Assembly (NCBI RefSeq): GCF_031769215.1
Contig: NW_026782064.1
Span: forward strand, 1,736,001-1,800,000
Length of the DNA stretch: 64,000 nucleotides
From: Ylistrum balloti
Taxonomy: Eukaryota
Direction of reading: 5' to 3'
The translations under genes were made by a program, and so were the position numbers. Shown piece by piece: positions 11,271 through 16,235 of this stretch. The notes beneath the pieces were generated by a model. The model did no database searches, was not told the origin of the DNA, and saw only the letters and a program-made list of their open reading frames with translations. Within the stretch, counting starts at the first letter, position 1, and every line of letters begins with the position of its first letter.

Positions 11271-11526
11271 GGTATTCTGTATCAGACTACAAATCTACCT
11301 AATTTCTGTATAGGTTGCATTCGACTTAACACGTATTAGGTTTCCTGTATAAGGCTTACTTCTAGCAGGAGCAGGTATTCTGTATGACAACGCATACAAC
11401 CTTAACTCTAACAAAAAGCACAGGTATTCTGTATAACACCGCATACAACCTTAAACTGTAACAAAAAGCACTGGTATTCTGTATAAGGCTGAATCCAAAC
11501 TTAATTCTAACACAGATCACAGGTAT
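11271..11526. repeat. Degenerate ~49-50 bp tandem repeat (caggtattctgtata...caaccttaa...aacaaaaagca), about 5 units
   Basis: The caggtattctgta core recurs at ~11372, 11421, 11471 and 11520, with weaker copies upstream. Confidence 0.8.
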
Positions 11527-11809
11527 AATGAGTGCGGTATGATGTGGCAATTACTCTTTAACTTTATCTTACATTGCTATTTTCGTTTTAAAATGATGTT
11601 GCAATTATTATACTTTTCGGACACGTTCTTAAATATGCCTTATTTTGTTTTCATATAAATACGACGACAATGTCAACTTAAATTAAATACTCAAATATAT
11701 AAGAATATATATATATATATAGTGAAAATATCAAAAGCTCAGTGTCCGCTAAGTATATATATATATATATATAAATGATTTTTGACAAAAGAAGAAAGAC
11801 GTTACATTT

Positions 11810-11847
11810 TGCACTAGCGCTTTCACTGTATTAGATCTTCAGGTGCA
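11810..11847 (-). ncRNA. Minimal type-I hammerhead ribozyme (inverted pLTR copy)
   Basis: Exact reverse complement of the motif at 12427..12464. Confidence 0.75.
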
Positions 11848-12426
11848 TAGTAACTGTACATAATGGTGTGGCGTCACAACATGTTATCTCTTTTCTCGAC
11901 AAGAAACATCAGAAACAAAGTTACCGGAAGTCAATACTTGTCGAGAAAAGAGATGTGGAACGTGTCAACATATCATAACAGGGAATTCCTTACAATTAAA
12001 AAGTGGAAAGAAGTGGGAAGTTAAAAGCAGTATGAACTGTAAATCAAAAAACGTGATTTACTTAATCCTTTGTCCAAAATGTGGAAGTTTCTATATAGGA
12101 CAAACAGAAAACCTCCGCAAACGCGTAACATTACATCGCGAACAAATATTCCACGAAAGATATAGACATCTACCAATCAGCCGACACATAGCAGGATGCA
12201 ACGACGGCTTTTTCCAAATATTCCCCCTGTATACTTTTTCATCTGAAACCAATCGAATACAAAGAGAAGCCAAGGAGTCAGAAATTATAAACATTTTAAA
12301 ACCAGACTTGAATATTAATGTTTAACCGCATTGTAAAGTTTGCAAAATATAATTATGCCCCTTTTATATTATGACGTCATCAACAGATAACATGTTGTGA
12401 CAACACACCATTATGTACAGTTACTA

Positions 12427-12464
12427 TGCACCTGAAGATCTAATACAGTGAAAGCGCTAGTGCA
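12427..12464 (+). ncRNA. Minimal type-I hammerhead ribozyme in the PLE pLTR
   Basis: UGCAC-CUGAAGA-UCUAAUACAGU-GAAA-GCGC-U-A-GUGCA. Stem I is UGCAC/GUGCA, both core boxes are present, stem II is very short, stem III is the palindrome AGCGCU, and predicted cleavage is after CUA at 12459. This is the known architecture of PLE-associated minimal hammerheads. Confidence 0.8.
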
Positions 12465-12500
12465 AAATGTAACGTCTTTCTTCTTTTGTCAAAAATCATT

Positions 12501-12506
12501 TTTATT
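12501..12506 (-). terminator. Candidate polyadenylation signal (AATAAA) for the ankyrin-cGLR gene
   Basis: tttatt on the + strand at 12501..12506, about 310 nt past the distal stop and at the PLE boundary. Confidence 0.35.
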
Positions 12507-12813
12507 TATAATTTACTCGCATCTCGTCAAATCAAGTTTTTTCTATATACAGATTGTATATATATATATATAAGTTACATACACGCCTATGGTCAGGTTA
12601 TAATTAATTTATAAACATATTTTGCTAGAATTTTCTTCCAACGATTTCTCTTTTTGAAAATTTTCATGTCGATGTCATTTGAGCATCCCGCGGTATACAA
12701 TTGGAAAGTTAATTAACAGCGAGGTCTTATGTCAGAATATATATATTGAAATACCATTTCTTACTTCGTAATTTTTTAAATATACCAACGTTAATAACTT
12801 CAGACAGAAAATT

Positions 12814-15800
12814 TCACGAAGCCCTCATAATTGTTAATATCAAATTGAGAAAAACCCTCCTCCTCCTTCTAATGGTGTGAATTTTTCTTCTCATGGCCTC
12901 TTGGTCACCTGGCCGACGAAATTCATATATGAATTCAAACAAGTTTTGTTGGGGAAGGAAATACACAAGGAGTTATCCGGTGTCATTAACACTCTTGAGA
13001 AATTCGAATATCTTGATTGTCAAGTCCACAGTGGTCTGCCACCGTTCTTCATCTGATATCTGATTCAAATCTTCATCGCATAGTTCTGGTTGTTTTCCAA
13101 TCAAATGAAACAAAGCGTTCTTCAACATGTAACTTGTTATATCCTCATTGGCTTCATAAATAGGATCAGTGGTTTCACTTTCTTCGTCGTTATCTGTATC
13201 ATACGATAGATCGGAAATATTAGATGAACCGTCCGAGGAGGCAACATCGGATAAATCCGATTTCAATAAAGACCCGGAGGTTGTCTGCATTGCGTTAGTT
13301 GCTTCGTCCATTTCCAAGATATTTTCTTCATCAGTGCCAGACGCCTCTTTCAATGATCTCACGAGATCACAGCATTCATCGTATTCACCTGGATCAAAAC
13401 GAACATCTTCACACTGTGTAATTTCCACTGCATCCCTAGCATACAGTTCTTTAAAGAAATCTGAAGTAAACCTCACCTTAGGACATTGACTTCTTATAAT
13501 TTTCGCCAATCTGTAACTCTCTCTTACAAAGTTCGGTAAGGATTCCAGGAACGAAACTTCCATTGGTGCACATGACAGTCGAAGGAGACTATCAAAATAA
13601 TCCCGTGTGTCACTGTCGTAGATAATTTCTGTTCTCGACAAATTCACATCTTCTATTTGAAAGGTGTCTATGGTTTTTGGTGAAATATCTTCTGGGGGTT
13701 GTAACAGCAGGAAGTGTCCTGCTTCAATAGCCATATTCTCTAATGGAATACGACTATTGTCTCTCTTGGAGAAACTAACAAAATTGTTGACTACACGTAT
13801 GGCAGGGACTAAATCGATACTGATTTTGAGACCTTTAAAGAGTCGACCAATCCATAAAATTTGAAAATTCAGGACAGCCATATGGTCAAAGCCATTTTCC
13901 TCATCTTCACTGGCATAAAGGATTTGCGTATCCTGCCATAACTCTTTTTCGAGTAAAATCTTCCAGATTAGTCTGAAAAGTTCAATCCTAACATCATATG
14001 TTTTCAGATATCCATTTCTGTCAAAGAAAGCTTCCATTTTAGAAGGTAGGTGCGCTTCTTCTTTCAGTTTCACTCTCACAAAATTCTCTTGGCTTTGAAC
14101 ATTGTCGTTCATGATGTGACAGTGCTCGAGGATACCAGAGAGACAGCAGACAAAGTCAAATTCATCAGGGTAGCCTGTCTTGGTTCCTTCTCTCATACTT
14201 CCCATAGGTATAATGTCGTTTTTTAATCTAGGATCGCGTTGAGATATTCGTTTTGATAGCCTTTTTATCAGGCTTTGAACAGCATCAATGACTTGGTTAG
14301 TCTCTTGGTTGTCAAACAGCTTTCCTGATCCTGGGTTAAGCAGAAGTTGTTTTGCAAGCACTTTGCCATTATATCGCTGCATCTCCAAAAGTTCAGTGTC
14401 ATTTTCCGCTTTGACGAAGTCTTCATAGTTTATGATCAGTTGATTACCAGGCCAAACATTTCTTTCGGAAAAGTTGTGTCGTTGATATATGACTTCGACT
14501 GATCCTTTCTGTCCTTCTGCTTCTAGGCTGCATGATTCTATGTTGTGTCCCTTTAAAAAGTCATATATTTTTGTATAGCCTAACAACTCAGCCAGTTTGA
14601 CGGGAGTACGGTTTTCTTCGTCTGCAAGCGAAGTATTTCCTCCTACTCTTACGAACGTTTCTACCATATTGATATCATTCATCCACACTGCATAATGGAG
14701 AGCGGTGGACCCATTTTTATCACAAGCATTGACACTGCATCCTCTAAGCAACAACTCCTCTATCGCTTTAAGATTTCTTTGAGCTTGTAAATTCATCATA
14801 GCGTTACGTCCAAATTTGTCTGTAATTGTTACCTCAGCACCGGCATCACAGATTAAAGATATTTGTTTCACTGATCTTGCCCAAAATATTGGCGTTAGGC
14901 CAAATTCATCCTGAAGATTTGTGTTGGCGCCCCCATCTAGTAGGATTCTGCATACACTACGTCGGTTACCGATGATTTCCGTCGCCATTACCCGATGAAG
15001 AGGTGTCCTCCCCAGACTATTGGGTTTGTTAATATTTGCACCAAAACGAACAAATTCTTGAAAGATATTCAAATCAAAATGGCTAGACCCAAATAAAAAC
15101 CTCAGAAAAGGTGTTTCGCTGTCCTCAGCTTCCATATTGACGATATTACTGATAGATCCAGAACTCGATACCTGAAATGACTGGAACTGTTCGTTAAGAA
15201 TTTTGAACAAAAGGGGTCTGTCACTGCCTTGGCGCCTTATGTAAGACAGCAGGAAATTGTTTCCGTTTGCATCTTGCAACTCAAATTCAAAATCTACACT
15301 TTGATTCAAAAGTGCAGATAATATTATTTCCGGTTGAAATTCGTGTTCTGCCGCCATATGTAAAGCCGTCTGCCCTTTTGTGTTGGTGATATTGACATCA
15401 ACACCAGCTTCAATCAGCATATTTATAGCTCTGCTCCAAAATTCACCATCATTTTCGTCTTCATCAAAGGTCATTAAAGCATGTAAACATGTGTTCCCAT
15501 CTTCATCTTGTACGTTTACCAGTGTTCCTGGTAATTGCAAAATTGTTTCCATCTTGTTGAAATCGCCTCCGTAACATACATAGTGCAGTGGTGTCCTTAA
15601 CCATTTATTTAAGCAGTTTAAGTCAGCTCCAGCCCTGAGCAGTATTTCCATGACCTCATGTTCGACTGTGTCCTGCGTGGCGTAGTGAAGAGCGCTTTCC
15701 CCATCGGAGTCCTGTATATTAACAAGTGCATCATGATCAAGCAGCAACTGCACCATATGAAAATCACTGTTTTGTATCGCTATGAGCAGAGGGGAAGGGT

Positions 15801-15906
15801 CATCATCACATTTTCGGTTAGCTGAAGTACCGGACTGTAGAAGAGATTGAACGCCTGTGTGATCCTGGAATTGTATTCTGCAAAGTAATTCGTTCTTCCA
15901 AGGCAT
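12814..15906 (-). CDS. Intronless ankyrin-repeat / cGAS-like receptor (cGLR, Mab-21 nucleotidyltransferase) fusion. 977 aa to the TAA at 12973..12975; the frame continues 52 more codons to TGA 12816..12814
   Basis: About 12 ankyrin repeats (e.g. GESALHYA, GQTALHMAA, GRTPLHRV, GSTALHYAV). These are followed by IIPMGSMREGTKTGYPDEFDFVC and SIDLVPAI (GS motif and E-x-D...D triad) and ITSYMLKNALF. The first ATG is at 15906; the track start at 15936 is TTG. Confidence 0.9.
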
Positions 15907-16235
15907 AGTGAATATGTCACAAGTGCACGTATCCAACCTGTTTGACCTAGTTTAATGTGACAGAAACATAAGATCAGATTGACTTACATTGTTCGCTGCG
16001 AAGTTTCCCCATACGTCAGGTATCTGTGTAAGAAAAATTGTGACAAATCAAATATAAGTAGTAATATCAAAGGCAAGGTTTAGTGACAATGTTCTGAAAT
16101 GTGATATAAAATTAGAGAATTATCAAAAAAATTAGATTCAATCATAATTACTCTCGCTGAAATAAAGTGATATAAACAAGTATCTTATAGCTATCCATTC
16201 TGTCCATATTTATCAAATCATTCCTTTTGATTATT

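What the first reader, a model, noticed from the sequence alone, without database searches (positions are those of the whole stretch)
11773..12501. Penelope-like fragment whose 117-bp inverted ends each carry an intact minimal hammerhead ribozyme
Both core boxes, a 5-bp stem I and the palindromic AGCGCU stem III are visible at 12427..12464 (+) and 11847..11810 (-). Minimal PLE hammerheads are thought to cleave as dimers. Here the copies are inverted, so a transcript from either strand has only one sense ribozyme, and its full antisense partner could sequester it in a long hairpin. The arms differ at only 2 of 117 nt and the GIY-YIG frame is unbroken, suggesting a recent insertion from an active family.
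Basis: partly seen in the sequence, partly recalled or inferred. Interest (0 to 1): 0.7.

Follow-up and report, generated by a model that had tools for sequence, protein, structure and literature searches.

The report
Truncated Penelope-like retrotransposon insertion, inverted ends
This is an ordinary dead-on-arrival insertion of a young Penelope-like jumping gene into a TA repeat. Its two inverted ends, each with the family's small hammerhead-type RNA motif, are the usual by-product of how these elements insert, and the layout was described in 2014.

Summary
Arms 11773-11889 and 12385-12501 are reverse complements (2 mismatches in 117). Each carries a full hammerhead core, a 5-bp stem I and the palindrome AGCGCU. 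The GIY-YIG frame is open.

It is a 5'-truncated copy of a young Penelope-like element (PLE) family: about 98% identity between copies and at least 115 exact motif copies genome-wide. Longer copies carry a reverse transcriptase (RT) with PLE motifs.

The inverted arm is not a designed terminal repeat. At least 14 loci show the same head-to-head layout, always with 3' ends outward and with variable arm lengths. This matches the published PLE insertion architecture and both-strand priming.

A sister family (3' UTR about 59% identical) keeps every core base and shows compensated changes in stems I, II and III, so the motif is a real PLE hammerhead relative. "Intact" is too strong, though. Helix II is a U·U mismatch plus two pairs, G10.1-C11.1 is missing, and Rfam hammerhead models give no hit.

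The hairpin-sequestration idea is thermodynamically sound but has no evidence of function. No RNA data could be obtained. The scan noted a similar fragment elsewhere in this genome (s1-268604).

The parts
11754..11772 (.). Left flank: (TA)n microsatellite target
   Evidence: TA run 11754-11773. Other copies of the family are also flanked by (TA)n.
11773..11889 (-). Inverted arm: reverse complement of the element's own 3' end (12385-12501). It starts at the proximal 3' end and has no tail.
   Evidence: 117 nt with 2 mismatches. BLAST to the family reference maps it to ref 2336-2464 on the opposite strand.
11810..11847 (-). Hammerhead-like motif of the inverted arm (sense on the minus strand). 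Predicted cleavage between 11815 and 11814.
   Evidence: Descriptor hit, identical to the plus-strand copy.
11886..11903 (-). 18-nt junction piece: exact reverse complement of 11937-11954. It overlaps the arm by a 4-nt microhomology (ATCT) and is followed by 3 filler bases (11904-11906).
   Evidence: It reads as an inverted copy with an internal deletion joined head-to-head to the main copy.
11907..12501 (+). Main 5'-truncated copy of the Penelope-like element (end of the RT-EN linker, GIY-YIG domain, 3' UTR/pLTR)
   Evidence: Colinear at 97-99% with at least 14 other copies from query position 135 on.
11939..12325 (+). CX4CxxC linker plus GIY-YIG endonuclease coding part with an internal CxxC (CCHH type). 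Stop TAA at 12323-12325.
   Evidence: Translation. Pfam PF01541 E 1.3e-7. TIGR01453 group I intron endonuclease E 2.6e-6.
12371..12380 (.). Palindromic CRE-like decamer ATGACGTCAT in the 3' UTR/pLTR, conserved in the sister family
   Evidence: Invariant block in alignment A1.
12427..12464 (+). Hammerhead-like motif: stem I 5 bp, CUGAAGA, helix II (U-U mismatch plus 2 bp, 5-nt loop), GAAA, palindromic AGCGCU, A17. Predicted cleavage 12459/12460.
   Evidence: Sister-family comparison. Genome-wide pattern count 115 vs 0 for the control.
12502..12549 (+). Tail: optional 48-nt 3' extension, present at this end only
   Evidence: Shared with L031, L035, L038, L040 and L041 and absent from L032-L034, L036, L037 and L039. 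Ref 2465-2511. Conserved in sister copies L072 and L063.
12557..12572 (.). Right flank: (TA)n microsatellite

Best explanation
Window 11773 to about 12549 is one dead-on-arrival insertion of a young canonical Penelope-like retrotransposon (C-terminal GIY-YIG; Neptune/Nematis-type linker) into a (TA)n microsatellite. It consists of two cDNA-derived pieces joined head to head, with both 3' ends facing outward. The first is a 643-nt 5'-truncated copy that starts at the distal RT start site and so carries the tail. The second is a short inverted copy that starts at the proximal site and has no tail. That copy is 117 nt plus an 18-nt piece, with an internal deletion bridged by a 4-nt microhomology. 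This inferred mechanism follows what was shown in vitro for a PLE protein, which cleaves both target strands and extends both by reverse transcription from two adjacent internal start sites. Because every copy of the 3' end carries the family's hammerhead-type motif, the two arms each carry one, on opposite strands. The motif is a diverged relative of PLE minimal type I hammerheads, which pair through a palindromic helix III as domain-swapped dimers. In this family helix II has eroded to a U-U mismatch plus two pairs, so any cleavage is probably weak. This copy has no RT and no evidence of transcription. If read through, its RNA would fold into a 117-bp hairpin that buries the motif. Shown: anatomy, family membership, recurrence of the layout, and conservation with compensation between two families. 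Inferred: the twin-priming mechanism, dimer cleavage, and hairpin sequestration.
For: PLE identity: GIY-YIG with internal CxxC and a CX4CxxC linker. Longer copies carry a 621-aa RT frame (RVT_1, with GLKF and DKGG motifs), continuous with the endonuclease frame in L034. Young family: 111 BLAST pieces at 93-100% and mean pairwise identity 98.0%. Variable 5' truncation, from ref 128 to 2192. Recurrent inverted layout: 14 minus/plus motif pairs within 3 kb, 0 plus/minus pairs and 2 direct pairs among the 100 listed matches. Arm lengths range from about 100 to about 835 nt, and junction overlaps are 1-5 nt. The tail sits at exactly one outer end in all 11 head-to-head insertions of this family that I could read. 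(TA)n flanks. Literature: an inverted 5'-truncated copy, a 30-40-bp tail at one end and (TA)n bias linked to the CX2-5CxxC linker are typical of PLEs (PMC8557442). PAc protein cuts and extends both strands and starts RT at two internal sites that delimit the tail (PMC11167929). Min-hammerheads lie in PLE repeats, including pairs on opposite strands 100-700 bp apart (PMC4209133). Motif: all core positions are identical in a sister family whose 3' UTR is only about 59% identical. Compensated changes: helix III AACGUU to AGCGCU, both palindromes; 10.3-11.3 A-U to U-A; a coordinated 1-nt shift of both stem I strands. Hairpin: MFE -293.6 kcal/mol, z -23.9, with the arms fully paired.
Against: No Rfam hammerhead model reaches E 10 for this motif or the sister motif, even in 71-76-nt scans. 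Helix II lacks G10.1-C11.1 and has only 2 Watson-Crick pairs. Nearest-neighbour energies do not favour the double-hammerhead fold: -14.1 against an alternative dimer at -20.0 kcal/mol. Covariation rests on only two families, so on few independent events. Twin priming is inferred from the anatomy and from an in vitro study of a different PLE clade. The Neptune versus Nematis assignment was not tested by phylogeny. The longest copy seen (about 2.4-2.5 kb) may itself be truncated.
Confidence: 0.85

Rival explanations
1. The CUGAAGA...GAAA block descends from a hammerhead but is catalytically dead in this family. It is kept only because the copies are young, or because the sequence serves another role in the 3' end, such as RT or EN recognition.
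For: A U-U mismatch replaces the G10.1-C11.1 pair, and only 2 pairs remain in helix II. There is no Rfam hit. The active dimer fold is not favoured thermodynamically. PLE min-hammerheads cut poorly in vitro even when canonical (PMC4209133). Hammerhead mutants do not impair PLE insertion in vitro (PMC11167929). The family with the weaker helix II is the younger and more abundant one.
Against: All core bases, the palindromic helix III and stem I are kept. Helix III changed by two compensating substitutions relative to the sister family, which suggests selection on pairing after the split.
Confidence: 0.4
2. The inverted structure arose after insertion, by a DNA-level rearrangement (fold-back or inverted duplication during replication or repair), and not during reverse transcription.
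For: The junction carries a microhomology and an 18-nt snap-back-like piece, features also seen in replication-based rearrangements.
Against: The same layout recurs at 14 or more independent loci, with 3' ends always outward and different arm lengths. The arm starts exactly at the element's proximal 3' end next to (TA)n. The one-tail-per-insertion regularity ties it to the insertion step. It is the published PLE architecture.
Confidence: 0.05
3. It is a non-autonomous fold-back or MITE-like DNA transposon whose 117-bp terminal inverted repeats captured a GIY-YIG fragment.
For: Near-perfect terminal inverted repeats flank a short internal segment.
Against: No other copy shares both ends. Arm lengths and truncation points differ from copy to copy, most copies have no inverted arm at all, and longer copies encode an RT. 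The right end carries a tail that the left end lacks.
Confidence: 0.02
4. The inverted insertion acts as a hairpin-RNA locus: a source of small RNAs against the PLE family, or a structured element in or just past the 3' UTR of the adjacent ankyrin-cGLR gene.
For: The predicted duplex is 117 bp, near perfect, with a 495-nt loop.
Against: There is no expression data. The layout is a frequent by-product, so no selection on this copy need be assumed. No conservation can be tested, because the flanks are single-copy and no second allele is present in the assembly.
Confidence: 0.07

Closest known systems
Canonical endonuclease-positive Penelope-like elements with a CX2-5CxxC linker (Neptune/Nematis clades; Arkhipova 2006; Craig et al. 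2021, PMC8557442)
   Same: A single frame encodes an RT with GxKF and DKG motifs followed by a C-terminal GIY-YIG endonuclease with CCHH-type cysteines. It has a Zn-finger-like linker and inserts into (TA)n. It shows strong 5' truncation, an inverted 5'-truncated copy at the 5' side, an optional tail at one end, and a hammerhead motif in the terminal repeat region.
   Different: The family is compact, with the longest copy seen about 2.4-2.5 kb. In the copies read, direct upstream pseudo-LTRs are rare and inverted ones dominate. The clade was not resolved by phylogeny here.
Minimal type I hammerheads of metazoan PLEs (Cervera and de la Pena 2014, PMC4209133; Lunse, Weinberg and Breaker, RNA Biol 14:1499, cited in PMC6765202)
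   Same: It has a complete catalytic core, a short open stem I (5 bp), no helix III loop but a palindromic 15.1-16.1 hexamer suited to dimer formation, and a location in the PLE terminal repeat. It also occurs as pairs on opposite strands a few hundred bp apart.
   Different: Published motifs have a long helix II (6-8 bp), a conserved G10.1-C11.1 pair and one extra nucleotide after A9. Here helix II is a U-U mismatch plus 2 pairs, and the sister family has G-U plus 4 pairs. Rfam RF00163 does not score it.
Both-strand cleavage and extension by the Anolis Poseidon PLE protein in vitro (Frangieh et al. 2024, PMC11167929)
   Same: It explains outward-facing 3' ends on both sides and two alternative 3' termini about 48 nt apart (the tail) as two RT start sites.
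   Different: That work used a different clade and an in vitro system, and it saw no strand difference in start site. Here all 11 head-to-head insertions of the family have the tail on exactly one side.
Twin priming inversions of human L1 (Ostertag and Kazazian 2001; from my own knowledge)
   Same: A second target 3'-OH primes reverse transcription and yields an inverted segment joined by microhomology.
   Different: In L1 the second primer anneals internally on the same RNA, so only one end carries the 3' terminus. Here both ends carry the element's 3' terminus.

Membership tests
Penelope-like element (canonical C-terminal EN+) | RT with PLE N-terminal motifs (GxKF/Y, DKG) and RT core motifs | tested here: met
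   This holds for the family, not for the truncated window copy. The L035 621-aa frame has GLKF, DKGG and FLDD motifs and a Pfam RVT_1 match at E 5.6e-8.
Penelope-like element (canonical C-terminal EN+) | GIY-YIG endonuclease C-terminal to the RT in one frame, with CCHH-type cysteines inside the GIY-YIG core | tested here: met
   Window 11939-12322: Pfam GIY-YIG E 1.3e-7, with CPKC between GIY and YIG. In L034 a 279-aa frame runs from the RT C-terminus through the endonuclease.
Penelope-like element (canonical C-terminal EN+) | CX2-5CxxC linker (Neptune/Nematis, absent in Penelope/Poseidon; modified in Hydra) | tested here: met
   C-x4-C-x2-C lies upstream of the GIY-YIG domain. The definition is from PMC8557442. 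Which clade within this group was not tested by phylogeny.
Penelope-like element (canonical C-terminal EN+) | Insertion architecture: 5' truncation, adjacent inverted 5'-truncated copy, 30-40-bp tail at one end, microsatellite target | tested here: met
   The tail here is 48 nt.
PLE minimal type I hammerhead | Conserved core C3-A9, G12-A14, A15.1-U16.1, H17 | tested here: met
   The core is identical in the sister family.
PLE minimal type I hammerhead | Palindromic 15.x-16.x helix III without a loop (dimer-forming) and a short open stem I | tested here: met
   AGCGCU here and AACGUU in the sister family are both palindromes. Stem I is 5 bp in both.
PLE minimal type I hammerhead | G10.1-C11.1 closing pair, an extra nucleotide after A9, and a helix II of several pairs | tested here: not met
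   The closing position is a U-U mismatch, followed by C-G and U-A only. The sister family has G-U plus 4 pairs. The criteria are from PMC4209133.
PLE minimal type I hammerhead | Covariation across families | tested here: inconclusive
   There are three compensated differences against one sister family. More distant families could not be fetched.
PLE minimal type I hammerhead | Match to a curated hammerhead covariance model | tested here: not met
   No hammerhead family scores at E 10 or better. As a positive control, RF00163 scores 26.9 bits on L042.
PLE minimal type I hammerhead | Site-specific self-cleavage (as a dimer) | not testable with these tools
   This needs in vitro transcription or mapping of RNA ends.

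The most novel reading that the evidence does not exclude
The younger and more abundant of two sister PLE families carries a hammerhead with no G10.1-C11.1 pair and only two helix II pairs, while stem I and the helix III palindrome are kept by compensated changes. One possibility is an undescribed ultra-minimal helix II variant that still cuts as a dimer. The other is natural evidence that PLE spread does not need ribozyme cleavage, with the palindrome kept for RNA dimerisation. RNA dimerisation would fit the head-to-head, one-tail-per-insertion products. The resulting 117-bp hairpins could also feed small-RNA silencing of the family.
Probability: 0.12. Interest if true: 0.5.

Novelty: new member of a known kind. 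Interest (0 to 1): 0.2.

Why it matters
On its own it matters little. It is a textbook product of PLE insertion, and opposite-strand hammerhead pairs in truncated PLEs were reported in 2014. It is still a clean, young example in a bivalve. The junction (4-nt microhomology, 18-nt inverted piece), the strict one-tail-per-insertion pattern and the always-outward 3' ends are genomic footprints that agree with the both-strand priming seen in vitro for another PLE clade. The eroded helix II in a proliferating family also bears on the open question of whether PLE hammerheads are needed for transposition.

Tried and rejected
- **Rfam:** at gathering threshold on the whole window and at E 10 or better on 1 kb, on three sister loci and on 71-76-nt slices, there were no hammerhead hits. 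The positive control worked. This is real negative evidence about canonical shape, not a tool failure.
- **Strict hammerhead descriptor:** it fails on helix II. The relaxed descriptor gives only the two reported sites.
- **Thermodynamic test of the double-hammerhead dimer:** the active fold is not the MFE for either family, so it is uninformative.
- **More distant PLE families:** Pattern searches returned only the two families, decayed copies and unrelated motifs.
- **RNA evidence for transcription or cleavage:** I tried no other route.
- **Empty-site allele on another contig:** the right flank is single-copy and the left flank matches only a dispersed satellite, so no second allele exists in the assembly.
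- **PDB sequence search and NCBIfam with the RT:** nothing useful.
- **MITE or fold-back transposon reading:** rejected, because the arms and truncation points differ between copies.
- **Large protein searches:** not used. The family scans and motifs already settled the protein identity.

Full report
**Observation.** The repeat finder reports arms 11764-11892 and 12382-12510 (129 nt, 96%). A base-by-base comparison trims this to 11773-11889 against 12385-12501. That is 117 nt with two adjacent mismatches (11871/11872 vs 12403/12402). All other family copies carry the left-arm version, so the right arm is the changed one.

A descriptor requiring CUGANGA, GAAA, a palindromic helix III, H17 and a stem I of at least 5 bp finds exactly two sites in the 64-kb window: 12427-12464 (+) and 11847-11810 (-). 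In 300 randomised windows the mean was 0.017 sites. A17 is at 12459, so the predicted cleavage site 12459/12460 is placed correctly. The reading frame is open from 11864 to the stop at 12323-12325. It encodes a C-x4-C-x2-C linker and a GIY-YIG domain with an internal CxxC.

**What the element is.** The genome (648 Mb; earlier notes call it a scallop) holds at least 111 BLAST pieces of this sequence at 93-100% identity. Twelve aligned copies are on average 98.0% identical.

Copies are 5'-truncated at many different points. The longest, about 2.4-2.5 kb, carry a 621-aa reverse transcriptase frame. It has a Pfam RVT_1 match and the PLE hallmarks GLKF and DKGG. In L034 one open frame runs from the RT C-terminus through the endonuclease. 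In L035 a single in-frame stop separates the two.

An RT followed by a C-terminal CCHH-type GIY-YIG domain behind a CX2-5CxxC linker is the canonical EN+ PLE architecture of the Neptune/Nematis type. The Hydra clade is excluded because DKG and CCHH are present (PMC8557442). I did not run a phylogeny.

**True extent.** The alignment of copies shows two alternative 3' ends. One is directly after the sequence ending at window 12501. The other lies 48 nt further on, at 12549. Both are followed by (TA)n. The window copy has the extension on its right side only, and its left arm abuts (TA)n directly at 11773. So the insert spans 11773 to about 12549, within a TA microsatellite. The optional extension is the PLE "tail" described in the literature. 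It is conserved in the sister family.

**The inverted arm is a by-product of insertion.** It is not a designed terminal repeat.
- Among the first 100 of 115 exact genome-wide matches to the motif pattern, 14 pairs lie within 3 kb in minus/plus order (3' ends outward). None lie in plus/minus order, and two are direct pairs. The reversed-pattern control gave 0 matches.
- Arm lengths differ between loci, from about 100 to about 835 nt. Head-to-head junctions show 1-5 nt of overlap.
- In the window the junction is slightly more complex. The arm is followed by an 18-nt exact reverse complement of 11937-11954, sharing a 4-nt microhomology with the arm. Three filler bases follow, and the main copy starts at 11907. 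The inverted copy thus reads as a second cDNA with an internal deletion, ending within 30 nt of where the main copy ends.
- In all 11 head-to-head insertions of this family that I could read, exactly one outer end has the tail. Among solo copies 6 of 16 have it. One sister-family pair has none.

Craig et al. describe this same architecture for PLEs: an inverted 5'-truncated copy, a tail often at one end, and (TA)n bias linked to the linker. Frangieh et al. showed that a PLE protein cleaves and extends both target strands. They also showed that it starts reverse transcription at two adjacent internal sites that delimit the tail. I therefore infer two-sided target-primed reverse transcription followed by microhomology-mediated joining. 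This is inference from anatomy, not a demonstration.

**Is the motif a hammerhead?**

Evidence for:
- All conserved core positions are present, with a 5-bp stem I and the palindrome AGCGCU.
- A sister family (about 72% identical in the endonuclease coding part, about 59% in the 3' UTR) has a motif at the same position with the same core.
- The sister motif shows compensated differences. Helix III is AACGUU against AGCGCU, both palindromes, and one copy carries the one-step intermediate. Pair 10.3-11.3 is A-U against U-A. Both stem I strands are shifted by one nucleotide, preserving 5 bp.
- The location in the PLE terminal region and the palindromic helix III match the published PLE minimal hammerheads, which are thought to act as dimers.

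Evidence against a fully canonical, active ribozyme:
- Helix II is a U-U mismatch plus only C-G and U-A with a 5-nt loop. The sister family has G-U plus four pairs.
- The G10.1-C11.1 pair and the extra nucleotide after A9, which Cervera and de la Pena list as recurring features, are absent.
- No Rfam hammerhead model reaches E 10 for either family, even in 71-76-nt scans. RF00163 scores 26.9 bits on the 45-nt tandem hammerheads just upstream of the window.
- Nearest-neighbour energies favour other dimers over the double-hammerhead fold in both families, which is uninformative given the tertiary nature of the core.

My reading is that the motif is homologous to PLE hammerheads (about 0.85). Whether it is catalytically competent in this family is uncertain (about 0.4 that it is effectively dead). 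The family with the weaker helix II is the younger and more numerous one. This fits reports that hammerhead activity is dispensable for PLE insertion in vitro.

A 729-nt transcript of either strand is predicted to pair its two arms completely (MFE -293.6 kcal/mol, z -23.9). That would bury the single sense motif. A minimal hammerhead also needs a second sense copy to build helix III. The statement is sound as thermodynamics. However, the copy lacks an RT, nothing shows it is transcribed, and the layout is a frequent accident of insertion. There is no reason to assume selection on it.

No second allele exists in the assembly to test for an empty site.

**Novelty.** Hammerhead motifs in PLE terminal repeats, and pairs on opposite strands 100-700 bp apart attributed to truncated PLEs, were published in 2014. 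The inverted/tail architecture was published in 2005-2021. The scan itself noted a similar rearranged PLE fragment in (TA)n elsewhere in this genome (s1-268604), with the same verdict. This is a new member of a known kind.

The modest points of interest are the eroded helix II in an expanding family and the strict one-tail-per-insertion pattern.

No full-length consensus, repaired frame or candidate for revival was made or named.

Noticed in passing
window 12502-12549 and loci L001, L002, L006, L010/L028, L011, L015, L018, L025, L027, L030, L035: All 11 head-to-head insertions of this PLE family that I could read carry the 48-nt tail at exactly one outer end. Solo copies have it in 6 of 16 cases. 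One sister-family pair (L062) has none. If the two ends were independent, this would be unlikely (roughly 0.48^11).
   Followed up: partly
window 12371-12380; sister family in alignment A1: The palindromic CRE-like decamer ATGACGTCAT is conserved in the 3' UTR/pLTR of both PLE families, although the UTRs are only about 59% identical. The sister family has two copies. It may be an orientation-independent promoter or enhancer element of the pseudo-LTR.
   Followed up: no
window 11374-11526: Three 49-50-bp tandem units belong to a dispersed satellite. It has more than 200 matches in arrays on many contigs.
   Followed up: partly
window 12549-12973 relative to ORF 12973-15936 (-): The PLE fragment lies a few hundred bp downstream, in the gene's sense, of the ankyrin-cGLR gene noted by earlier readers. 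It could sit in or just past that gene's 3' UTR, putting a 117-bp inverted repeat into the transcript. This is untested.
   Followed up: no
L042 4421-4540 (about 3.4 kb before the window start): A 45-nt tandem repeat (2.6 units) has units that RF00163 recognises as type I hammerheads (26.9 and 26.5 bits, below the gathering score of 34). I used it here as a positive control.
   Followed up: partly
G000:C19:1146418-1146455 (-), seen only as a pattern match: An old diverged copy has A10.1-U11.1 closing helix II and AAUGUU in helix III. It may be intermediate between the two families, or a CpG-decayed relative. Its flanks could not be fetched.
   Followed up: no
L006/L034 (G000:C238:216921-219000): This complex copy has a chimeric unit (an internal piece plus the inverted 3' end) duplicated in tandem with a 247-bp period. 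That gives two sense hammerhead motifs on one strand.
   Followed up: no
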